A stretch of 64,000 bases of DNA from Botryllus schlosseri. Its lineage: Eukaryota. Numbering within the stretch: position 1 is the stretch's first letter; the number at the start of each line of letters is the position of its first letter. The notes under the pieces are model-generated. The model was not told the origin of the DNA and made no database searches. It worked only from the letters and a program-made list of their open reading frames with translations. This document shows, one piece after another, positions 38,388 through 55,200 of this stretch. Both the position numbers and the translations under genes were made by a program. The DNA lies in assembly GCA_051294905.1 (NCBI GenBank), contig CM119373.1:12152001-12216000 (forward strand). The letters run 5' to 3'.

Positions 38388-38588
38388 CTTAAAACCATTA
38401 AAAACGGCATATGAAAACAACTAGCCTACAATACAAATATGTGCGGAAAACGCGTACTCATTAAAGACGCTGGTATTTTGCAGTACTTTCTAGTGGTTAT
38501 GTAAATCAAATTGGATTCGATATACAGAATTGAATATTGGTGTGAGATTCGATGTTGTCCAGTCCTAGCTATGATGCTGTTGTGAACA

Positions 38589-38791
38589 TGTCGTAAACTG
38601 ACTATTGCGTTGAATAACTAACTGAAGCTTTATTAAGGCAAAGGTAACCAATGTGGCTTTAAGCAACATAGAACACAACTGACAGCAGAACAGAAGAGAA
38701 GAGAATGACACGGTAACGATAAGGCGACACTGTACTGTACAACGTAACTAATCAGATGAAAGTAATTATTGCCTAATTGCGGATCACCACA
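38589..38791 (-). repeat. 3' LTR
   Basis: Matches 42531-42733; preceded on the minus strand by the PPT. Confidence 0.97.
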
Positions 38792-38843
38792 TTCTACCCC
38801 CCTTTCATTTTGTAAATTCACATAGAAGAATGACACAAAAACA

Positions 38844-40013
38844 TCAATGACTAACAAAATTACCATACCGATCCGGCTGGCGCCTAACTCTAGTTGAACG
38901 CCGAAGCTCGACGTCTAGATTTCTACTCGACTCATCTGGTGCATCCTCTGAATGGTTAGATTCTTGAGGCTCTTCATCAGATGACTTCAACTCAACGTTA
39001 CAAACTTCGCGACTTGGCTCGTGGCCATCGATATCAACAGAACAAGGTTCAGCTTGTTTCGTTTCAGGATTAGTCGATGGTGTGTCTTCTCCAGTAGGAA
39101 AACGGGCCAAATCGTTGAGTGAGACGTTTGACTCGCGGCCGTTAGGAAAACGAACACGTGCGTAAGTCGGGTTGGCTTCAAGAAGTTCGACCTCAGAACA
39201 TAGTTCGTCGCCCTTGTTTCTGACGAATTTGCGTAAGAAAACTGGCCCCGGTGTCAATAGCCAGGATGGCACGCTATTCCCCACCATACTTTTTCTTGGA
39301 AAGGAAAAAAATCGGTCATGCGGTGTTGAATTAGTTGACGTGCAAAGTAGCGATCGAACTGAATGTAGCGCATGAGGAAGGGCGTCAGCCCAACATGATT
39401 CTGAGACTCCGGTTGATTTCAAAATGAGTTTGATAGTTCGCCATAATGTTTGATTAAGGCGTTCGCACTGCGAATTTCCTGTTGGGTGGTAAGGCGTAGT
39501 GAAGCTAGTTGCAACCCCGCGAGAATGTAAATAATCCTTGACTTCCTTGGACACGAAAGCGGTGCCTCGGTCACTGTGAACGTATCCCGGAAGTCCAAAA
39601 ACTGCGAATAGTGTCGACAAACACGAAACGACGGTTAGCGCGGAAGTGTTGCGACATGGAAAGGCGAACGGAAAACGACTATATTCGTCTATGACAACGA
39701 ACATGAAAGGGGATTTGTTAGATTTCAAAGGCCCTTTGAAGTCTACGTTGATTCTTTCCCAAGGTTTCGTTGCTTTCACAAGCACTTGCGGATTGCATTT
39801 GTAAAAATTTGGTTTGATCTGAGCACAAATGCGGCAACGAGCGCAAGTCTCACGGACGTCATTTAGGGAGAACGAGAGATTTTTCGAACGAACGAAATGA
39901 TGCAGCCTTGTGACTCCTGGATGACCCAGAGTGTCGTGTATGCGATTTAGATTAGAACCCAACTCACAGGGTGAAATCGATGCGCAATACGAAGATGTGG
40001 TCCGCGAAAACAT
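38844..40013 (-). CDS. Gypsy integrase portion of pol (continuation after a 1-nt frameshift)
   Basis: HHCC (HDTLGHPG..CARCRIC) and D-D-E (NVDFKG, HSDRG, QCERLN); no chromodomain. Confidence 0.93.
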   Translation of the reverse strand: MFSRTTSSYCASISPCELGSNLNRIHDTLGHPGVTRLHHFVRSKNLSFSLNDVRETCARCRICAQIKPNFYKCNPQVLVKATKPWERINVDFKGPLKSNKSPFMFVVIDEYSRFPFAFPCRNTSALTVVSCLSTLFAVFGLPGYVHSDRGTAFVSKEVKDYLHSRGVATSFTTPYHPTGNSQCERLNQTLWRTIKLILKSTGVSESCWADALPHALHSVRSLLCTSTNSTPHDRFFSFPRKSMVGNSVPSWLLTPGPVFLRKFVRNKGDELCSEVELLEANPTYARVRFPNGRESNVSLNDLARFPTGEDTPSTNPETKQAEPCSVDIDGHEPSREVCNVELKSSDEEPQESNHSEDAPDESSRNLDVELRRSTRVRRQPDRYGNFVSH

Positions 40014-40027
40014 ATCAGCCGCAACAT

Positions 40028-42511
40028 TCAGTGCCCCGGTTTGTGTACGATATCATACGAAAATTGACCAAGTTCGACACGCCACAGCTGGATTTTGGTA
40101 TTTTTGATTTTACCTTTAGATTTGCCGTCAAACATGAACGCGACAGATCTTTGGTCAGTAACAAGAGTGAAATGTCTGCCATGTAAAAAATGAGCCCATT
40201 TACGAACTGCCGCGATAATTGAGGACGCTTCTTTCTCAACAGAGGAGTATCGTATTTCACTTGGCGATAGTGCTTTTGACATGAACGCGACCGGTCGACC
40301 GTTTTGACTGAGGATAGCTGCAATGGCTGCATTGGAAGCATCACACTCTATTGTGAACGGACTTGTCTCGTCAATCCTACCAAGAGACGCGTCAACTAAC
40401 TCGCGTTTTAAATCGTTAAATGCGATAGATGCATTTTCGGAAAGCGGAAATTTTTCGACTGAATACAAAGGACGGATTTTGTCGGAAAAGTTGGGCAACC
40501 ATTTGGCATAGTAGGCAAACATACCACACACTCGTTTTAGTTCTGGGTTGTTGCGTGGCGGCAATAAATCGATTAACGGCTTCAGTCTTTCTGGGTCCGG
40601 TTTGATCACGCCATGCGACACGCGATAACCGAGCAAGTCTATTTCCGTAGAACGGATGATCGACTTCGAATGATTGAAAGTGAGGCTGAATCGCTGAGCG
40701 GCATTGAGAAACGCGTCGAGATTTCGATCGTGGTCGTCCTTATCCATACCGCAAACAGTAATATTATCGAGATAAGCGAATGTGCCGGTGAGCTTGTTGT
40801 CTTTTATGACGTTGTCTATTATTCTTTGAAATGCCGAAACTCCGTTGGTGACTCCAAATGGCAATCGACGGTATTGGTAAAGATTTCCAGCGGCTTCGAA
40901 TGCCGTATACGGACGATCATCAGGTGATAGTGCCACTTGATAATACGCGGACTTCAGATCTAACGTACTGAAAACTTTGAAACGGGCGATGCTGTTGACT
41001 TGGTCATCGATCCTTGGTAAAGGATAGGCGTCTAGTAAGGTATACCTGTTGACCGTCTGAGAGAAGTCGATGACCATGCGCTTCTTGTGTCGACCGTCAT
41101 TTACAACAAGAACCTGTGCTCGCCAAGGCGATGAGGACGGCTCAATGATTCCTTCCTTCTCGAGTTTCGCAACTTCCGCTTTAATGAAATGTAGATCGGC
41201 TACGCTATATCTTCTGGATTTAGTGGCAATCGGTTTACAATTTGGTGTCATAAACTTGAAAATTTGCGGTGCTTCGACACACGCTTGAGCAACTCCGCAT
41301 ACACTGTACTTCTGATCTCGAGGGAGTTCCAAGGTATCTTTATCTCCGTCCATATTGAAAATGACCCGTTTATGCAAGTTCATGAAATCGAGACCAAGCA
41401 CCACATCAGCGCATAAATCTTCCATCCCTTTAAGAGGGAATTCCGTATATTTCGTTTCGTTTACAAGAATGTCCGGTCTGTAGAGTTCTTCAATCTTGCG
41501 GGAATGGGATTTAGAAGCAAATGTAACCGTAGAGGAGTACGGAGTGGATTTCAGGTCAATTTCGTTGGCGTATCCAGTGCTTATGAAGCTTTCCGCGGAA
41601 CCGGAGTCGATTAAAGCAAATGTTATGTGGCAGCCGATCTTAACCACGATTCTTGCTTTTATGAGACATTTGGGTACTCCGATGGCGCTGAAGTATGAGA
41701 TCATTGCAGTTACTGTTTTCCTGTTGTCGGTGGCCTTTCTCATGCAAACCACTTCATAATGACCTAGGACTCCACAATAGCCACACTCGCTCCGTTTCGC
41801 TGGACATTTATATCGGGAGTGGAATGACTGACCGCAAAAAAAGCACTTCCGATCAGGTTTGATTGTTTTGCTCATTGCGTTGAGTTGACTGTGAGTTTCT
41901 GTGGATGATAGTTCGACTTCGGGATTCAAAGATTTTTCCAGCGGTTCGACGCCGACAGATGAACATGGAGTGCTGCAATAGATACTAGAGCTTCGCTGGG
42001 CGAATTCTAATGAGCGGGCTTTTGAGATCGCCATTTCGAGGGTTACAGCCCCGTCACTTTCTAATAATCTCTGTCTGATAACGTTTGATCGGAGACCAGT
42101 AACGAAAGCGTCGCGGATGGACTCCTTGCGATGATCTTCCGCCGAGATAGTCTTGAATGTGCAATCTTTCGCTAGATCTGCCAAGGCGCGGGAAAATTCC
42201 TCGATCGTCTCTTCGGGCTTCTGAATACGGGTTACTAGCATGTGGCGGACGAAGATTTCGTTCTTTTGCTTGATATAAATTTTGTCGAGAAGTTCTATTG
42301 CGGTATCGTAAGTCGAACTTTCTTCAAAATAGGAATAGACAGACGACGACACGAAATTTGTTAAGATCTTCAACTTGTCGATCTGTGTATCTTGATCAAA
42401 TGATGAAAGAAAATTATCGAAGGTCTTCTTCCAATGCTTATACTGTTTTTCAGCAGAGGCGGAGTCCGGACTGATATCGAGCTTGTCTGGTTTCAGAATC
42501 CTTTGTGCCAT
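40028..42511 (-). CDS. Gypsy gag-protease-RT-RNase H polyprotein
   Basis: Two Zn knuckles (CFFCGQSFH..C; CGYCGVLGH..VC), protease LIDSGS, RT LDLKSAYYQ..LPFG..YLDN, RNase H ECDAS..EKEA..TDQ. Confidence 0.96.
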   Translation of the reverse strand: MAQRILKPDKLDISPDSASAEKQYKHWKKTFDNFLSSFDQDTQIDKLKILTNFVSSSVYSYFEESSTYDTAIELLDKIYIKQKNEIFVRHMLVTRIQKPEETIEEFSRALADLAKDCTFKTISAEDHRKESIRDAFVTGLRSNVIRQRLLESDGAVTLEMAISKARSLEFAQRSSSIYCSTPCSSVGVEPLEKSLNPEVELSSTETHSQLNAMSKTIKPDRKCFFCGQSFHSRYKCPAKRSECGYCGVLGHYEVVCMRKATDNRKTVTAMISYFSAIGVPKCLIKARIVVKIGCHITFALIDSGSAESFISTGYANEIDLKSTPYSSTVTFASKSHSRKIEELYRPDILVNETKYTEFPLKGMEDLCADVVLGLDFMNLHKRVIFNMDGDKDTLELPRDQKYSVCGVAQACVEAPQIFKFMTPNCKPIATKSRRYSVADLHFIKAEVAKLEKEGIIEPSSSPWRAQVLVVNDGRHKKRMVIDFSQTVNRYTLLDAYPLPRIDDQVNSIARFKVFSTLDLKSAYYQVALSPDDRPYTAFEAAGNLYQYRRLPFGVTNGVSAFQRIIDNVIKDNKLTGTFAYLDNITVCGMDKDDHDRNLDAFLNAAQRFSLTFNHSKSIIRSTEIDLLGYRVSHGVIKPDPERLKPLIDLLPPRNNPELKRVCGMFAYYAKWLPNFSDKIRPLYSVEKFPLSENASIAFNDLKRELVDASLGRIDETSPFTIECDASNAAIAAILSQNGRPVAFMSKALSPSEIRYSSVEKEASSIIAAVRKWAHFLHGRHFTLVTDQRSVAFMFDGKSKGKIKNTKIQLWRVELGQFSYDIVHKPGH

Positions 42512-42513
42512 AA

Positions 42514-42529
42514 TTCTATGTTGCTTAAA
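42514..42529 (-). promoter_or_regulatory. PBS-position sequence complementary to the element's own LTR (putative self-priming site)
   Basis: TTTAAGCAACATAGAA (minus strand) starts 1 nt after the 5' LTR and is the exact reverse complement of LTR 42615-42600. It does not begin with TGG as a tRNA PBS would. Confidence 0.75.
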
Positions 42530-42530
42530 T

Positions 42531-42733
42531 TGTCGTAAACTGACTATTGCGTTGAATAACTAACTGAAGCTTTATTAAGGCAAAGGTAACCAATGTGGCT
42601 TTAAGCAACATAGAACACAACTGACAGCAGAACAGAAGAGAAGAGAATGACACGGTAACGATAAGGCGACACTGTACTGTACAACGTAACTAATCAGATG
42701 AAAGTAATTATTGCCTAATTGCGGATCACCACA
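42531..42733 (-). repeat. 5' LTR
   Basis: Matches 38589-38791; on the minus strand it has an Inr-like TCAGTT (42624-42619) and AATAAA (42576-42571). Confidence 0.97.
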
Positions 42734-43602
42734 GAACATCTACAAAGGACCAAGTTGAATCAGTTGGGGAATAGGAATGGCACTGTCTAAAGAAAATTGT
42801 ATGGTGATTATGAACCTCTGACGTTGATATCTTGTCAACCTTGCAATCAGTTCAGTGGATAATCCACGACTCTTTCTCGTTCTCACGACGAGAGAGGACC
42901 GTACACGCGAACGGCCAGTTTCTAGATATTTCTGGCGGGCGAAATCGCGAAATCTAGAGCGAGAGCGATCAAACAGAAAGAAAGAAGTATCTATTCAACC
43001 GCGAACAGGGATATCTAAAACTCCGGGATGGCGGACTCTCTCGTTTTCACTCCCGGCGCCGAGCGACAGGAGGGCCACATGTTCTTTGTTCAGAGTTCAC
43101 TCTCGCTGAGTTCTTGAGTCGGACGGTTCTCGCGCGGTTAACGAGATGTTGCAGTGTTTATTTTACCTACATTTAGATCAATTTTGAGGATGTAGACTAA
43201 TATATGGTATGTGATGGATGATCAGATATCCATATTCTAGTGTGCCAGCAATACACAGTATAAATTACCGGTATTGTGCTACATTTCGTGCAACTGTTTT
43301 GATATATTATTAGTTGTCAGGAACACCTGTACTAGTGGGGCTCTTGGTTGTATTCGAAGCATGTTTAGTAGTTTATCAAGTCATTTAATTGAAAGTATAA
43401 TTCCTCATATATAAAGGCTTCCTTGTATTGCGTTAGTAGCTTGAAATCCCTGCCCAGGCAATCCATCCTATTTGTATATTTATACTAAGTTGTGTCTTTA
43501 TATGAATAACTACTACTAAGTCATTTAGCTGCCTTCCTATCGGTTCACATTATTATTTTGACTTTGTTAACCCAGGGACAATGACTATCACTGATAATTA
43601 GG

Positions 43603-44796
43603 ATGGGGTATACATGTTGCATTCCTGAATGCAGCACTGGGTACAGGTCTAGTAGTAAAACTGGTGCGACTGCTACACTGCTCAAGTTTCCACGGGACGA
43701 AAAATCTAAGGAGAAATGGATCAGGGCGATACCGAGGCAGAACTGGACACTGTCGGTGAACCACAGGGTGAGGAAGCGTAATGCATTGTTCACGCCCCTG
43801 CAGCCATCAGGAGATCATCCGGGCCTTGCATACCTGAAAGAGGCAATAATCATCTTTAAAGAATGGCAAGCATCTGGAAATATTGGACTGACTCGAGAGA
43901 CATTTATGGCGTGTATCCAGACAATGGGTGCCATTATTGACCTCACGAGTTATTTGGTGAGCAAATATGGTATTGAATACATACTCTCAGGAAAAGTGAT
44001 GTTCGATCCGATAGAAGCAAGATTTGGGATGTACCGCCAGTCAAATGGTGGCAACTTCTTCATGTCAGTGAAACAGTTGCTTTCGGCAGAGAAAAAATTT
44101 CGATGCTTAAGTTTACTCCAACAACGAGGATTGTTCATCGCTTCACGTCTCGATCAGTCTGATCATGGAAATTATCATGAGGATGATGCACCCTCTTCAT
44201 CCCAGTTCTCGTGGTTAGTTGAATACTTGAGTAATGTTGCCATTGACGAGGTGGCTGATAGTGATGCGGCTGTTTCTTTCTATGTAAGTGGTTATATTGG
44301 ACGGTCCATTACCAGGCGAAGGCATTGTGGCAAATGCAGTAATTTACTTGTTAAGAGCATTTCTGTTCCGCCACTATCTGATTCTATACCAGACAAGTAC
44401 AAATCAGTGCTGCAAATTGCAAACAGGGGTGGTCTCTCAGAACCATCTGACTATTGTTATGTCTTGACAACCCTTGCTGTCCAATATTACACAGCTCTAG
44501 CCAACAACAGTGATGTTATGAAAAAGTTCATAACCTGTCCTAATCCAAGAAGGGTTTTTGTATCTGCCATTCGCGAAATTTTGAAGTCAACTTTTCTGTG
44601 CAATCTCATATCTGTTGTATGTGAGAATGAGAAAGATCCCCATAACAATTTTGAATTGATCATGCAAACGTCATTCAACTACTTTGCAAAAAAACAGTTG
44701 AAACGCTTCAACAGCAAGACTAGTTCCAAGCTGCCCATGAGCCAAAAACATCAAAAGATCAGGAAACTTAACTCCAAGGGTTCCAGCAAATCTTAG
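43603..44796 (+). CDS. Truncated THAP domain fused in frame to the C-terminal part of a P-element transposase (397 aa)
   Basis: MGYTCCIPEC..KFP..KW..AIPR (THAP N-terminal half) joined after NHRV to LTRETF..YILSGK..DPIEARFG.YRQSNGGN and Y.SGYI..C..C..L..RGGL (P/THAP9 C-terminus). Most of the catalytic core is absent. Confidence 0.85.
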   Translation: MGYTCCIPECSTGYRSSSKTGATATLLKFPRDEKSKEKWIRAIPRQNWTLSVNHRVRKRNALFTPLQPSGDHPGLAYLKEAIIIFKEWQASGNIGLTRETFMACIQTMGAIIDLTSYLVSKYGIEYILSGKVMFDPIEARFGMYRQSNGGNFFMSVKQLLSAEKKFRCLSLLQQRGLFIASRLDQSDHGNYHEDDAPSSSQFSWLVEYLSNVAIDEVADSDAAVSFYVSGYIGRSITRRRHCGKCSNLLVKSISVPPLSDSIPDKYKSVLQIANRGGLSEPSDYCYVLTTLAVQYYTALANNSDVMKKFITCPNPRRVFVSAIREILKSTFLCNLISVVCENEKDPHNNFELIMQTSFNYFAKKQLKRFNSKTSSKLPMSQKHQKIRKLNSKGSSKS

Positions 44797-45530
44797 TGAT
44801 TTCTGGCTGTATCTGCTTTGTATGTTATTACACCTGCTCTGTATCTTCCCTCGATAAAAATACCTTGGTGTTCAGCTAGTGATTTCTGGCTGTATCTGCT
44901 TTGTATGTTATTACACCTGCTCTGTATCTTCCCTCGATAAAAATACCTTGGTGTTCAGCTAGTGATTTCTTATTCTATCTGCTCTGTATCTTGCCTTGAT
45001 TAAGTTGGTGATGTTTGGTATCTGCTGTGTCTCTACTAACCTGGATTAAAATATGTTTGTCATCAGCTAGTGATTTTCGGTTGTATATCTGCTCTGTAGC
45101 TTGTCTCGTTAAAAATACGTTTGTTTCCAGCTAGTGATTTTTACTATATCTACTCTGTAGCTAGCCTTGATTAAAATACTGGAATCTGCTGTGTATCTAA
45201 CCTGTATTAAAATGTTTGTCATCAACAAGTGACTTTTAGTTGTATCTGCTATGTACCTTGCCTTGATTAAAATACACATGCTTTCCGTTACTGATATTTA
45301 GTACATTCGTTTTCAGCTCTGTATGAGATAACCATAATGTCTGCTAGGCAGTTTTGATTTTATCTGCTCTGTGTTTTTTGGTTATATTTGCTGTGCATCT
45401 TGCCTTGAATAAAATACCCACCTTGATTAAAATACACATGTTTTCAGTTACTTATATTTGGTACATTCGTTTTTAGCTCTGTATGAGATAACCAGAATGT
45501 CTGCTAGGCAGTTATTTGAGAACCAAGAAA
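44795..45530. repeat. 83-bp tandem repeat array in the 3' part of the P element
   Basis: Two exact 83-bp units (TAGTGATTTCTGGCTGTATCTGC...GTTCAGC) followed by progressively diverged units. Confidence 0.9.
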
Positions 45531-47612: not shown

Positions 47613-49283
47613 TCAAACCCATGTCTGAGTATTCCTCATTGTTATTGAAGTGGTGCGTCTTCGACCTTGCCATGCAAGATGATTTTCCTCTAACTCCTCT
47701 TTAATGGCATCGAACTCATTTGGATACTTCCATTTCAGAAAGGAAAATAGCGTATATTCATGTTCTCCGGTAAAGACTTTCAAATCTGTCAGCCGTTGGT
47801 CTCTGATCAAAAATTTACCAGCCACGAACATCACATCGCGCCAGTAAAGTTCCCGACTGATGAATGCGTAGTATAAAATAGAGCGACCACTTGAATCAAG
47901 GATACTTTGTAAGTTGAGTATTGAGTTGGGAAATTGGACAATCCGTTTTGTTGGAACGACGCCTTGATTCAAGTCTGAATTCTCAAGGAAATCAACTAGC
48001 GTTTTCCAATTACGTTTTGCTTTTAATTGTTTCACAAATACATCTGCATGGTCATAGTTTAAAGAGTAATCCGTTGATTTGAACACACTTCGGTAGTCAT
48101 CCGAGGAAAATTTCTTGTATAACTCTTCTTTTTGCTTAATATCAGTGACCAACGCGCTAATGACAGTGCCCGTTCTTCCAAACATATGACGCCACATTTC
48201 GATTACCTGGAAATCTTTACGCCCCAACGCCTCACTAACTTTACTTTGAAGCTTCTTCTTATAGCCATCCGAATATAAGTTATTTAGAACACGTTCAATG
48301 AACTGGTGTTCACGAGGACGCGCACTCTTGAGGAATGAAAGCAAAATAATCGTTACTTTATTTTGATTTGCTGGCTCCATTTTTAACGACGCAACAATCA
48401 CCTTTACTACACCATAAATCAATGTAGCCAATTGCACAACAAATGACAAGTGATGCGTTACTAGAACTGCTGAGAGCGAGTAAGAATATGATGTTGGCGT
48501 TGCTTCACATCTATAATATTCGAGTCGCGTACCATTTCCGTCGACTACCGTCAAGTTACAATCGAAAAAGGATAATGGCGGCCAAATGGTCGGTATCAGG
48601 TGTAATCGAAGAGCCAACACAAGATGGATTAATATAACAATACCCCGGTAAGTACAGCACATAACATAGGAGACAAGTAGGTCCGTCGTCGGTAAGCTCA
48701 AGGTCAATTTTAAACATGCTTCGCGCACGTTGCTCTGGGGTTCAGAGCAATTTGTATCCAAAATATTCATAACAAACACGTCGTGGTGTAGCTCACTTTC
48801 CTCATACGCAGTGTACAGCGTCTCGGTTGCACTATCAAACGCTGATGCAGCATTCTTGAGAGACTTCATTCTTGTCCATGATACCCAAGTAACAAACTCG
48901 ATGATTGCGCAGATGAGAAGCATCGAAATCTTATCGAATATAATAGCGGTCGTGTTCAAACATTGATTTGTCACGTGTTCCAAATAGTCATCAGTATGAT
49001 CTGCTTCTCTATCGGAGCTGCAAGTCAGATCGTGTTTCATGCTTTCTAATCGCCAGAAAATCAAGGCGCAAACAGAGTTAACAACGAGCGAGACCACTCT
49101 TACTTTTTCCCAGGTAGGCCGGAGCCGTGATTGGCTCAAAAGATTACTATATATGATGTCATCTGCGCCGAAAGGTGGCATCGCCTTCGTAAAATTTGGA
49201 TACACTTGCTGATTAAGGCAGAAATATATCACTATAGCATAGTCTGTGTACGACATGGGAATAGAATGTAGACATGATAGCAT
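47613..49283 (-). CDS. LRRC8/pannexin-like large-pore channel protein with a non-LRR C-terminus (single coding exon; likely start ATG 49181, MPPFG...)
   Basis: Open 556 codons. Four hydrophobic segments; two Cys in each extracellular loop (DLTC..NQC; FDC..YRC); SRLRPTWEKV resembles LRRC8 RILKPWWDVF; a post-TM4 NQNKVTIILLSFL segment; no LxxLxLxxN repeats. A possible acceptor (TTTCTGCCTTAATCAG) lies just upstream of ATG 49181. Confidence 0.8.
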   Translation of the reverse strand: MLSCLHSIPMSYTDYAIVIYFCLNQQVYPNFTKAMPPFGADDIIYSNLLSQSRLRPTWEKVRVVSLVVNSVCALIFWRLESMKHDLTCSSDREADHTDDYLEHVTNQCLNTTAIIFDKISMLLICAIIEFVTWVSWTRMKSLKNAASAFDSATETLYTAYEESELHHDVFVMNILDTNCSEPQSNVREACLKLTLSLPTTDLLVSYVMCCTYRGIVILIHLVLALRLHLIPTIWPPLSFFDCNLTVVDGNGTRLEYYRCEATPTSYSYSLSAVLVTHHLSFVVQLATLIYGVVKVIVASLKMEPANQNKVTIILLSFLKSARPREHQFIERVLNNLYSDGYKKKLQSKVSEALGRKDFQVIEMWRHMFGRTGTVISALVTDIKQKEELYKKFSSDDYRSVFKSTDYSLNYDHADVFVKQLKAKRNWKTLVDFLENSDLNQGVVPTKRIVQFPNSILNLQSILDSSGRSILYYAFISRELYWRDVMFVAGKFLIRDQRLTDLKVFTGEHEYTLFSFLKWKYPNEFDAIKEELEENHLAWQGRRRTTSITMRNTQTWV

Positions 49284-51249: not shown

Positions 51250-54200
51250 TACTTAACCTCATCGGACGGGAGAAAGCGACAAGGCCACTTTTTAGTCTTT
51301 TCAGTGATCTATGTCGTACAGTTAGCAAAGCGCATCGCCTACAACAGCACAGCAGGAAACCCAGCCGACCGAAACCAAACCAGCTGAAAATCCAGCTCAA
51401 ACCGACACTATCGTTAAAGAAAATAAACAGAGAACAGGATAGACCATCATGAAATCACCGAAGCCGACACGCAACAACAACGCAACTAAAAGGTATCTCG
51501 AAAAGCACGAGTATGACGAAATAAAATCGCCGACCAGAAAAGCTGTAAACCTGTCAACCGAACCGATGATAACAAACACAGTTCCGAAATCGTACCTTAA
51601 ATAATAACGATGGATCGACTGTCAAAAATTACGGTAAACGTTATAACATACTAAATAGCAACACGAAAAGAACTCTAGTTTTTGACTACCTTAAGAAATC
51701 CAATGCGGATATATGCTTTCTACAAGAAACACATACCACACTGGAAACATAATCCATATTGCAAAACGAATGGAATGGCACGTCTTTTTGGAACTCATAC
51801 GACAAAACTCTGCAGGTACAGCTATATTGATTACCGCGAAAAGACGTGACATAAGAATAAAGGGATCTCATAAGGATCCAGAAGGTAGAATTATCAACGC
51901 TGACACTAAAATAGGGAACGTTAACCTACAGCTAACGAACATATACGCACACACTGACGGCGCAAAGAAAAGACCCCAATTTTATAGAATGGCCAAAAGC
52001 ACCTTTAAAGCAGCTAACAAGATTGTCGCTGGCGACTTCAACTCTGTTGAACAACCACAGTTGGACAGGGTCAATACGGTCCCGTTCAAAGATAAGAAAG
52101 ATACAGAGGCCTTGAAAGAAAGTCTGAAAATAACTGGTGTGGAAGATGCCTTTCGAACCCTGTATCCAACTAAAAAGGAATATACGTACAAGTACGGCGG
52201 TGGTGAATCACGACTTGACCGAATATATGTGTCTGAATCTATTGCTATAAAATCATGCGAGCACAGATCGTGCCCGTACTCTGACCACGATGCGGTTCTC
52301 TTGAAAGCAACTATACAAAAACGGGAAATTGGAGAAAAGATTTGGAATAACAATACAATGATCTATGAAGAGGAATCCTTTCATGATGGATTTGCATCAA
52401 AATGGAACAAATGGCAAACTCTTCACCCCATTTTATACCGTACGAAAACAGAGTGGTGGATAGCTATCAAAGACAAAATTAATACTTTAGAAATCAAACA
52501 GGCAAATAGATTAGGAAAAGAAAAGGCGACGAAACTTGATACAGAAATGAAAAATATTGACGAAATGCGAAAACAGATCGACGAAGGGAAAGACCTCGTG
52601 GAGGAATATCGTCGTGTTAAAAAGAAAATTTGGAACTTGGAAGCGGATAGCCTTCAAAAATTACAAATCCAAGCCAACATCGAAAACGAAAATAGCCTGG
52701 ACAAGATTCCGTCAATGCTCTTTGACAAAATTAGAGAAAGAAGAGAGCCCGCATATATAGACGAACTTGTGGATACTAATACATCTGATCACGCCGCGAA
52801 ACAAACAATAGCAGCAAACTTCTACCGAAACCTGTTCAACAAAAGATCGATCGATAAGCAATGCTCTGAGGACTTCCTCGCCAACATCAATGGAGCTTTA
52901 TCAGATAATCAGGTTAGTGAACTTGATTCGGAAATTACCATGACAGAGGTTCGAACGGCCGTTTTCAGCCAGCATAACTGTGTCGTACGCCTGGCGCAGA
53001 CGGGATTAGTGCTGAATTTTAGCAATCGAGCTGGGATATAATCAAACACGACCTGGTGGATATATTTAACGAACTTTATGGTGCAAATGAGATCAATCGA
53101 GAAATTCTCGAAGGCGTCGTTAAAGTAATTCACAAATCTGGGGATGGATCTGATTTGAAAAATTATCGGCCAATCACATTATTGAATGTGGATTATATAA
53201 TCTTAAGTAAAATCATCACTCGCCGTATCCAAAATTTCCTTCCTGAAATCTCCCATGGACGCCAATATGTCAAACCGCCGAACAAAAGAACAGATTTGAA
53301 TGTCATGCTCAGAGAAATTGCCGAAAATATGAAAGAGAGAAAGGAAGGAAGGCGCAATAGTATCGGTTGACTTCAAGAAAGCGTACGATTCATTATCGCA
53401 TGATTTCATGTTAAGTGTTTTAACGAAAATGGGATTTGGTGTGAAAGCCCTGGCCTACATAGAAAACGTATACAAAAACAGCACGGCGAAAATATTTATT
53501 AATGGCCGAATCGGAGACACGGTAGAGATTGGCAGGGGAATCAAGCAAGGTGATCCCATTTCCATGTTATTATTCACGTTAACTACAGAACCTCTTCTCC
53601 AGATGTTAAATAAGAAAGTCCCTGGCTATAAACTGCCTGGAATGAGGAAATGAATTCTAACGCCAGCCTATGCCGACGATATCACGCTGACAATACCACG
53701 CAGAGCAGACGCGGAGTCGTGTATTGCTATAATTAGGAAATTCACGCTGGCAAGCAACTTGGACATGAACGAATTAAAGACAAAAGGAATACAATTCGGA
53801 ACAGACAGACGGCAGAGCACTATTCTCCACGTTGAAATGGGTTGACAAAATAAACGTCATGGGAGTATCGATAAGGAAAGCGAGAAACATACAGCAATGG
53901 CGAAAGATCTACGAAGACGCGGCAAAAATATGCAGCAAAATGAGAGATCTGAAATTAAGAATCGACGAAAAGGTAATTGTGTTCCGAACAAAAATATTCC
54001 CTAAATTTTTGTATCTAGGTATGATCCGATGCCACGCGAGACAAGAAGTAAACCGAAGAAACAAATCATGACGACGCTTTTCGATAACTACGCCACAGTT
54101 GAATATGACACGATCATCAAGAACAAGATCGCATGCGGTCTTGGTCTCTTAGACATCCCAACTAAGCTCGACCTCCAGTTCATAAAACCGGCGATCAAGT

Positions 54201-55200
54201 TCTTGAAAAAATCAGAGAGCGACTACAACGAATGGACAAGAAGGGTAGACCAACAAATTGCAATAACCTTTTCAAAGTTTTTGAATTACAGACTGAACAA
54301 CGCGAGACCGCACGCCTTCGAACCGCTGCAACATTGGAAATCGATGCTGCAAGTCATAGAAAATTACCAAATAACGAATGAAGAAATACAAAAAGAAAGT
54401 ATAAGAGAAATTTACAAGAAGATAATCGCTCGCAGAAGAAGCCAAGATCCAGTACCCGTTTGGGTTAATTGGAAGAATGTAAACAGCAATACGCTAAGAC
54501 CCGTAGAACGAAACTTCAATTGGGAAGTTGGGCACAACACCCTGTACACAAAACACAGGATGTACGAAAGACTTGGTGCGCACAGCACAGAGTGTGAATT
54601 CTACAATACGGGCATTGAAAACATCAGACACCTCTTTGTCAGATGCCAAGTCACCAAAGCAATTATATCCCGACCACTGCAAGCATGGGATAAAGCGGCA
54701 AATGAATCTGCAACGCAGCCTTCAGAAAAGCTAATCGTTGGTCTGAATCAGCCTGGCAGCCAGAAAGAAGATGCACTGCTTCAAATAATTACAATCTTCA
54801 AGCAAGCGGTATGGAGAATGCGAAACAGACGCGTGTACGAATCAGTCCAGCCGAGTGTCCTCTGGTTGAAAAAGTCCATCAGTCTACGAATACAGAACAA
54901 AATCAATCAACAGAGAGATATACTCGGGCCGATCACAACAGAAACACTGGCGCAAATAAAACGAGATATTCGAGAACGAACCTAACTACTACTACACTCC
55001 GATGACAACTCGACGACAGCAGCAATAACATCGTACTAAAATTTAACGCATTTATTCTGATATATTTTTAGTTTTGAACCGTAATTTTCATGAAATTCTA
55101 ACAAACGAAAGATGATTTTCGCATCGCCTTCCGTCGAACATCGCATTAATGTAATATCTTTCGTTACAGTAATTACCCGCGTATTTTTCAACGATACGTT
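51250..55200 (+). mobile_element. Degenerate L1-clade (Tx1-like) non-LTR retrotransposon
   Basis: ORF1-like tail to ~51600, ORF2 from 51610 to 54985, then an AT-rich 3' region. Ends are approximate. Confidence 0.85.
51610..54985 (+). pseudogene. L1/Tx1 ORF2 (APE endonuclease-RT-Zn finger), multiply frameshifted
   Basis: FDYLKKSNADICFLQETH, VAGDFNSV, SRLDRIYV, SDHDAV (APE); KNYRPITLLNVDY, DFKKAYDS, GIKQGDPIS, AYADD (RT); C..ENIRHLFVRC (zf-RVT); spread over at least six frame segments. Confidence 0.92.

What the first reader, a model, noticed from the sequence alone, without database searches (positions are those of the whole stretch)
40763..40774. RT active site reads YLDN instead of YxDD in a recently inserted element
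Seen: codons TAT CTC GAT AAT give FAYLDNITVCG, while the rest of RT and RNase H look intact, the LTRs are identical and the TSD is perfect. Established: YxDD is near-invariant; in Ty1, changing the second Asp to Asn keeps polymerisation but blocks transposition. Inference: either a lineage has evolved to work with a YxDN site, possibly alongside self-priming, or this copy was mobilised in trans or mutated by a single G>A.
Basis: partly seen in the sequence, partly recalled or inferred. Interest (0 to 1): 0.75.

Follow-up and report, generated by a model that had tools for sequence, protein, structure and literature searches.

The report
Retrotransposon lineage with YxDN polymerase site
The Asn in the reverse-transcriptase active site of this young LTR retrotransposon is not a private mutation. 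It is the inherited, selected state of a large animal-wide Ty3/gypsy lineage, so the second Asp of YxDD is dispensable in nature more often than textbooks suggest.

Summary
Window 40763-40774, read on the minus strand, is TAT CTC GAT AAT = YLDN, and its Asn aligns with the second Asp of the Ty3 YLDD motif.

It sits in a 4145-bp Ty3/gypsy element (38589-42733, minus strand). The element has identical 203-nt LTRs and a 5-bp target duplication (TGTTC).

The Asn is a lineage trait:
- 104 of the 119 closest homologues that cover the motif carry Y/FxDN.
- In ten multi-copy DN families, no copy that covers the motif has DD.
- Both Asn codons are used (AAT 35, AAC 16).
- DN RT-RNase H evolves under strong purifying selection (dN/dS 0.03-0.05).
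- Intact DN copies with 99-100% identical LTRs occur in other assemblies.

D and N have swapped at least 7 times on the tree. The other two catalytic Asp are invariant (138/138).

The family also carries a conserved Tf1-like self-priming signal: 11-19 nt directly after the 5' LTR pair with a stretch inside the LTR. This signal also occurs in a DD member, so it is not tied to DN.

This particular copy has one frameshift in gag-pol that puts integrase out of frame.

YVDN is already known in nematode BEL/Pao elements. I found no description of YxDN for Ty3/gypsy. The host was not identified, and sister copies from the same genome could not be obtained.

The parts
38589..42733 (-). Whole LTR retrotransposon, 4145 bp, Ty3/gypsy type
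   Evidence: LTR pair, domain order, single copy in the window
42734..42738 (.). Target-site duplication, 5' side (TGTTC on the element's strand)
42531..42733 (-). 5' LTR, 203 nt, TGTGG...CGACA, 100% identical to the 3' LTR
42600..42615 (-). Stretch inside the 5' LTR (TTCTATGTTGCTTAAA) complementary to the primer-binding site; putative 5' end of the transcript (self-primer)
   Evidence: transcription start not mapped
42514..42529 (-). Primer-binding site, 16 nt, one base after the LTR; does not start with TGG, so it is not a canonical tRNA 3'-end site
38844..42511 (-). gag-pol gene (gag, protease, RT, RNase H, integrase); broken by one frameshift, no internal stop
   Evidence: counts only
41744..41845 (-). 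Two CCHC zinc knuckles of gag
41378..41641 (-). Aspartic protease domain (DSG at 41600-41608)
40619..41089 (-). Reverse transcriptase domain (RVT_1); motif-A Asp at 40958-40960
40763..40774 (-). RT motif C: Y-L-D-N (TAT CTC GAT AAT), the finding
40061..40438 (-). RNase H domain (RT_RNaseH_2 / RT_RNaseH)
39807..39950 (-). Integrase zinc-binding (H2C2) domain
39483..39770 (-). Integrase catalytic core (rve); no chromodomain detected after it
38797..38810 (-). Polypurine tract AAATGAAAGGGGGG, 5 nt before the 3' LTR
38589..38791 (-). 3' LTR
38584..38588 (.). Target-site duplication, 3' side (TGTTC)

Best explanation
Window 38589-42733 (minus strand) is a recently inserted copy of a compact (about 4 kb), single-ORF, self-priming Ty3/gypsy LTR retrotransposon. 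It belongs to a clade spread across animals. Named hosts among its relatives are corals and an octocoral, gastropods, a stingray, a shrimp, a damselfly and Ciona. In this clade the usual state of RT motif C is Y-x-D-N. The Asn is therefore inherited and kept by selection; it is not a lesion. Inferred mechanism: the two-metal polymerase centre is built from the motif-A Asp and the first motif-C Asp, both invariant here. The third position accepts Asn, whose amide can still hydrogen-bond or ligate through its oxygen. By analogy with the Ty1 D211N enzyme, this could change the rate and metal preference without abolishing synthesis. Minus-strand synthesis is probably primed by the element's own transcript, as in Tf1: its 5' end folds back onto the 16-nt site just after the 5' LTR. 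Shown here: the motif, its homology to YLDD, its distribution, codon usage, purifying selection, young intact DN copies and the conserved complementarity. Inferred only: that DN enzymes polymerise in vivo, their kinetics and metal use, and the transcript start. This copy has one frameshift in gag-pol, so as assembled it probably cannot make integrase in the usual way.
For: The motif and its alignment to Ty3 YLDD are. Of 119 homologues that cover the motif (54-78% identity), 104 have Y/FxDN and 15 have Y/FxDD. In ten 90%-identity DN families with 5-137 members, the listed copies that cover the motif carry DN in 70 cases and none carries DD (three odd reads: YLEN, a partial LDN, one non-homologous string); several ORFs of at least 1150 aa occur per family. 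Across 82 related loci the fourth codon is AAT 35, AAC 16, GAT 16, GAC 10. Between DN elements dN/dS is 0.03-0.05 at dS 0.7-2.5; window versus L001 gives dN 0.14 with synonymous sites saturated. The motif-A Asp and the first motif-C Asp are 138/138, and the fourth position is only N (119) or D (19). Intact DN copies with single ORFs of 1196-1238 aa and 99.0-99.6% LTR identity lie in large contigs (L002, L007, L009, L011). In assembly WLWD01 all 13 retrieved loci are DN. For self-priming, 16 of 27 elements with LTR pairs have 11-19 nt of perfect complementarity at offset 0-2 after the LTR, while controls reach at most 8-12; at least 8 different sequences keep the pairing. The RNA fold is -28.1 kcal/mol with z -4.2. 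The Ty1 D211N enzyme keeps polymerase activity (PMC2148107). Natural DN precedents are YVDN in nematode BEL/Pao elements (PMC554778, PMC9094657) and GDN/ADN in RNA-virus polymerases (PMC9752661).
Against: No DN enzyme of this clade has been assayed. In Ty1 the same change stops transposition and cuts kpol 223-fold, and in retroviral RTs it is reported to inactivate the enzyme (PMC554778). No column co-varies cleanly with DN/DD, so no compensating residue was identified. The NJ tree is star-like, so the count of D/N switches and the ancestral state are uncertain. Some 100%-identical LTR pairs sit at the two ends of about 4-kb contigs and may be assembly collapse (L006, L008, L020). Sister copies from this genome and the reads were not available. 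This copy itself is frameshifted.
Confidence: 0.85

Rival explanations
1. Private lesion or sequencing error: a single G>A change, or a base-call error, turned YLDD into YLDN in this copy only.
For: D and N codons differ by one transition. The copy also has a frameshift, so it is not pristine. Reads could not be inspected.
Against: The nearest relatives P0001 (78% identical) and P0002 (67%) and 104 of 119 homologues have the same Asn. In ten multi-copy DN families no listed copy has DD.
Confidence: 0.02
2. DN reverse transcriptases are inactive, and DN elements spread as parasites of DD elements that supply polymerase in trans.
For: Ty1 D211N cannot transpose. DD and DN members co-occur in some samples (Ga0210059 and the JGI samples). 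This copy's identical LTRs together with a frameshift show that imperfect copies can be young.
Against: Strong purifying selection acts on DN RT-RNase H (dN/dS 0.03-0.05). The other catalytic residues are invariant, and the fourth position is restricted to N or D. DN persists at more than 50% protein divergence with both Asn codons in use. All 13 loci retrieved from one assembly are DN.
Confidence: 0.06
3. The genomic Asn codon is recoded to Asp in the messenger by A-to-I editing (AAU read as GAU), so the protein is YxDD although the DNA says YxDN.
For: Only that the first base of both Asn codons is an A whose editing would give Asp, and that D/N switches recur on the tree. There is no direct evidence.
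Against: Nothing in the data calls for it. DN is stable across very different animal phyla with different editing capacities. Edited templates would be copied back as G and should erode DN, yet DN dominates.
Confidence: 0.03

Closest known systems
Ty3 of Saccharomyces cerevisiae (solved RT 4ol8, Gag-Pol 7q5b)
   Same: RT-RNase H is homologous over about 375 residues (E 4.5e-47). The motif-A Asp, the Y-L-D of motif C and the RNase H catalytic columns are shared, and the domain order PR-RT-RH-IN is the same.
   Different: Ty3 has YLDD, separate gag and pol frames and a tRNA primer (from general knowledge). Here motif C is YLDN, relatives have one gag-pol ORF, and the primer site pairs with the element's own LTR.
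Cigr-1 of Ciona intestinalis / RepeatMasker class Gypsy-Cigr (recalled from memory; clade named in PMC6238403)
   Same: It is a compact element of about 4.2 kb with a single gag-pol ORF in a marine animal. A C. intestinalis protein (P0029, 61% identical in RT-RNase H) falls inside the same set of relatives.
   Different: The Ciona protein has YLDD. No Cigr-1 reference sequence was available, so clade membership was not tested.
Tf1 of Schizosaccharomyces pombe and the Tf1/sushi group (self-priming)
   Same: The primer-binding site directly after the 5' LTR is complementary to a stretch of the element's own LTR. This is conserved with covariation in 16 elements.
   Different: No chromodomain was found after integrase. 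The transcript start and the RNase H cut that would release the primer are not shown. To my knowledge Tf1 RT has the ordinary DD.
Nematode BEL/Pao elements Cer7-Cer12 and Atlas virus (YVDN)
   Same: They show the same Asp-to-Asn replacement at the last position of YxDD as a lineage-wide trait, in elements that look intact (PMC554778, PMC9094657).
   Different: They belong to a different superfamily (Belpaoviridae) and are restricted to nematodes. The element here is Ty3/gypsy by domain families and by homology to Ty3, so the Asn arose independently.
Ty1 RT mutant D211N (laboratory)
   Same: The same position carries the same replacement, and polymerase activity is retained in vitro (PMC2148107).
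   Different: It is an engineered mutant in a copia-type RT: kpol is 223-fold lower, Mn2+ is preferred and transposition is lost unless RNase H suppressors arise. Here the Asn is natural and selected, and no consistent second-site partner was found.
RNA-virus polymerases with GDN (negative-strand RNA viruses) or ADN (Birnaviridae) in motif C
   Same: They are right-hand polymerases in which the last acidic residue of motif C is naturally Asn (PMC9752661).
   Different: They are RNA-dependent RNA polymerases and are not homologous at the sequence level to this RT. The comparison is an analogy only.

Membership tests
Ty3/gypsy (Metaviridae) LTR retrotransposon | Direct LTRs with TG..CA ends flanked by a short target duplication | tested here: met
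   203-nt LTRs, 100% identical, TGTGG...CGACA, 5-bp TGTTC duplication
Ty3/gypsy (Metaviridae) LTR retrotransposon | Domain order gag(CCHC)-PR-RT-RNase H-IN | tested here: met
   Pfam hits in that order; two CCHC knuckles and DSG
Ty3/gypsy (Metaviridae) LTR retrotransposon | RT-RNase H homologous to Ty3 rather than to copia or BEL types | tested here: met
   Best solved relatives are Ty3 RT 4ol8 and Gag-Pol 7q5b, E about 1e-46; RT_RNaseH and RT_RNaseH_2 families
Ty3/gypsy (Metaviridae) LTR retrotransposon | F/YxDD in RT motif C (usual, not strictly defining) | tested here: not met
   YLDN here; 119 of 138 clade members have N at the fourth position
Cigr-1 clade | RT groups with the Cigr-1 reference in a phylogeny | tested here: inconclusive
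   Only a Ciona intestinalis protein (P0029) of unknown relation to Cigr-1 lies among the relatives. No reference sequence was at hand.
Tf1-like self-priming elements | PBS complementary to the 5' end of the element's own transcript | tested here: inconclusive
   The complementarity is present and conserved (16 nt here), but no transcript data were available to show that the stretch is the transcript's 5' end.
Chromoviruses (Tf1/sushi group belongs here) | Chromodomain at the integrase C-terminus | tested here: not met
   No chromodomain hit in the integrase reading frame at E up to 0.01
Nematode YVDN BEL/Pao elements | BEL/Pao-type pol | tested here: not met
   Pfam and PDB place the pol with Ty3/gypsy; only the DN motif is shared

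The most novel reading that the evidence does not exclude
The repeated D/N switching at one catalytic position (at least 7 changes in 138 sequences) is a natural tuning knob of polymerase chemistry, setting speed, fidelity or Mn2+ versus Mg2+ use. A whole pan-metazoan Ty3/gypsy clade exploits it, and the DN state is favoured in combination with the clade's compact, self-primed replication. This would make it a natural counterpart of the Ty1 D211N suppressor story and of GDN/ADN RNA-virus polymerases.
Probability: 0.15. Interest if true: 0.7.

Novelty: new variant of a known kind. Interest (0 to 1): 0.5.

Why it matters
YxDD is treated as a signature of functional reverse transcriptases. It is used to call elements dead or alive, and to design annotation filters and degenerate primers. 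A large, widespread animal Ty3/gypsy clade keeps YxDN under strong purifying selection, with young intact copies. This shows, independently of the nematode BEL/Pao case, that the second Asp is not essential in nature. Annotation rules that score DN copies as inactive will therefore misjudge this clade. The scattered DD members give natural matched pairs for asking what the third carboxylate contributes to catalysis. The conserved self-priming signal extends Tf1-type priming to a chromodomain-less animal lineage.

Tried and rejected
- Other copies in the window: none found by tblastn or blastn.
- Exact look-up of the window's two pol reading frames in the public gene index: not on record. Same-genome sister copies could therefore not be tabulated.
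- Host identification through neighbouring ORFs: the 556-aa ORF has no relatives, and the THAP ORF has only unnamed relatives. The host stays unknown.
- Literature search for YLDN/YVDN/YxDN/YIDN: only the nematode BEL/Pao cases came up. Searches for Cigr-1, and for YXDD with asparagine and gypsy, gave nothing on this motif.
- Search for a compensating residue that tracks DN versus DD: no clean column. The best signals are weak and probably phylogenetic.
- Link between DN and self-priming: rejected, because a YLDD element (L054) has the same signal.
- tRNA primer: no tRNA gene lies in the window and the site lacks the TGG start. It was not compared with a full tRNA set.
- Not run: the large representative protein search (operators' cost note; the claim does not rest on absence), structure prediction (the sequence homology to Ty3 RT is unambiguous), and scans of the prokaryotic and viral contig collections (wrong hosts).

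Full report
**1. The observation**

On the plus strand, window 40763-40774 reads ATTATCGAGATA. Its reverse complement is TAT CTC GAT AAT, Y-L-D-N. This lies at residues 580-583 of a minus-strand reading frame that starts at 42511, in the context FAYLDNITVCG.

Pfam places a gag-type aspartic protease, RVT_1 and the Ty3-type RNase H families in this frame. Integrase zinc and core domains lie further downstream. A search of solved structures returns Ty3 RT (4ol8_A, E 4.5e-47) and Ty3 Gag-Pol (7q5b) as best hits. In the printed alignment the Asn stands opposite the second Asp of Ty3 YLDD, and the motif-A Asp and the RNase H acidic columns are kept.

**2. The element**

- Two 203-nt direct repeats, 38589-38791 and 42531-42733, are 100% identical.
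- They begin TGTGG and end CGACA, and are flanked by a perfect 5-bp duplication TGTTC.
- A polypurine tract, AAATGAAAGGGGGG, lies 5 nt before the 3' LTR.
- gag has two CCHC knuckles and the protease has DSG.
- No chromodomain follows integrase.
- The element is 4145 bp and is the only copy in the window.
- Six single-ORF relatives of 1207-1235 aa align to it from first to last residue, but in two frames with no internal stop. gag-pol therefore has one frameshift, which leaves integrase out of frame (counts and outer bounds only).

**3. Is the Asn private or a lineage trait?**

A word search with the RT-RNase H part found 2013 relatives, of which the best 120 were listed at 54-78% identity. Most are single ORFs of about 1200 aa on contigs of about 4 kb or in large eukaryotic contigs. 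Named hosts are Palaemon, Ciona, Plakobranchus, Ischnura, Biomphalaria and Hypanus.

- **Motif census.** Of the 119 that cover the motif, 104 have Y/FxDN (YLDN 56, YVDN 26, YIDN 16, YMDN 5, FLDN 1) and 15 have Y/FxDD. The nearest relatives, P0001 (78%) and P0002 (67%), are YLDN.
- **Multi-copy families.** In ten 90%-identity DN clusters with 5-137 members, the listed copies that cover the motif have DN in 70 cases and DD in none (three odd reads: one YLEN, one partial LDN, one non-homologous string). Each family has several ORFs of at least 1150 aa. Named members come from Acropora, Montipora and Paramuricea.
- **Codon usage.** A scan of metagenome contigs added 80 loci. Across 82 loci the fourth codon is AAT 35, AAC 16, GAT 16, GAC 10. 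Asn has therefore persisted through synonymous change.
- **Column conservation.** In a combined alignment of 138 RT-RNase H sequences, the motif-A Asp and the first motif-C Asp are invariant. The fourth position is only N (119) or D (19).

**4. Are the DN enzymes under selection?**

- Pairwise Nei-Gojobori estimates over about 385 codons give dN/dS 0.03-0.05 at dS 0.7-2.5 between DN elements (L006, L008, L017, L025).
- Window versus L001 gives dN 0.14 with saturated synonymous sites.
- Very close copies within one family approach 1, as expected for decay after insertion.
- DN elements with a single ORF of 1196-1238 aa and LTRs 99.0-99.6% identical lie in large contigs (L002, L007, L009, L011). 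Further ones with identical LTRs sit on short contigs, where assembly collapse cannot be excluded.
- In assembly WLWD01 all 13 retrieved loci are DN.

Together this argues that DN elements replicate with their own polymerase. That conclusion is an inference from sequence, not a measurement.

**5. History of the switch**

On a neighbour-joining tree built without the motif column, DD members form seven separate groups (sizes 7, 5, 2, 2, 1, 1, 1). Fitch parsimony needs at least 7 changes whatever the root. The tree is star-like, so the direction and number of changes are uncertain. More distant relatives (36-45% identity) include both states.

No alignment column co-varies cleanly with DN/DD. 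The only regularity is that all 19 DD members have Leu at the second position, while DN members have L, V, I or M.

**6. Self-priming**

- Directly after the 5' LTR, 16 nt (42514-42529) are perfectly complementary to 42600-42615 inside the LTR.
- The RNA from that stretch to the start codon folds with the two ends paired: -28.1 kcal/mol, z -4.2, and 0 of 200 shuffles fold as well.
- Among 27 elements with recognisable LTR pairs, 16 have 11-19 nt of perfect complementarity at offset 0-2 after the LTR. Random internal 30-mers reach at most 8-12.
- The paired sequences differ between families while the pairing is kept, which is covariation.
- One of the 16 is a YLDD element (L054). The signal is therefore a family trait, independent of DN.
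- It resembles Tf1 self-priming, but the transcript start has not been mapped.

**7. What is known**

D211N keeps polymerase activity with kpol down 223-fold, prefers Mn2+, loses transposition, and is partly rescued by RNase H suppressors (PMC2148107).
- YVDN is a described hallmark of nematode BEL/Pao elements: Cer7-12 and Atlas virus (PMC554778, PMC9094657).
- RNA-virus polymerases with GDN or ADN in motif C are described (PMC9752661).
- I found no paper that reports YxDN for a Ty3/gypsy lineage. The library lacks most subscription journals, so this is weak evidence of novelty.
- The clade may be the one called Cigr-1 / Gypsy-Cigr (PMC6238403). This rests on memory and on a Ciona protein among the relatives, and was not tested.

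**8. Verdict**

The Asn is the normal, selected state of a widespread animal Ty3/gypsy clade. It arose independently of the nematode BEL/Pao case. How the enzyme works with it is inferred by analogy only. This copy is young but carries one frameshift, so its own autonomy is doubtful.

**9. Limits and a slip**

- The host was not identified.
- Same-genome copies and reads were unavailable.
- The large representative search and structure prediction were not used.
- Those bounds bracket the frame change. I did not localise it further, and here gag-pol is given as one part.
Queries ended at the frame change.

Noticed in passing
window 43603-44796 (+): A 397-aa ORF with an N-terminal THAP domain lies about 870 bp from the element's 5' LTR. 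It has 38 unnamed relatives, many with PF22824 and one with PF21787 (P-element-transposase-like). It is probably a THAP9/P-element-like transposon remnant.
   Followed up: partly
window 44794-44989, 45036-45179, 45261-45513: Tandem repeats of 83 nt (two copies 100% identical) and 64 nt, plus two 93-nt copies 160 nt apart, lie directly after the THAP ORF.
   Followed up: no
window 47613-49283 (-): A 556-aa ORF has no Pfam family and no relative in the word search. It has hydrophobic stretches. It is either an orphan gene or a chance ORF.
   Followed up: partly
window 51713-53041 (+) and 54029-54985 (+): ORFs with an APE-type endonuclease domain and a zf-RVT domain look like pieces of a LINE. 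AT skew is unusually high at 52-56 kb.
   Followed up: no
L001-L082 (relatives): All 19 YxDD members in the 138-sequence RT-RNase H alignment have Leu at the second motif position, whereas DN members use L, V, I or M. The PBS of nearly all families starts TTTAA/TTTTA.
   Followed up: partly
L006, L008, L020, L021: Contigs of about 4 kb begin and end in the same LTR with 100% identity. This may be assembly collapse of multi-copy elements and not truly identical LTRs.
   Followed up: no
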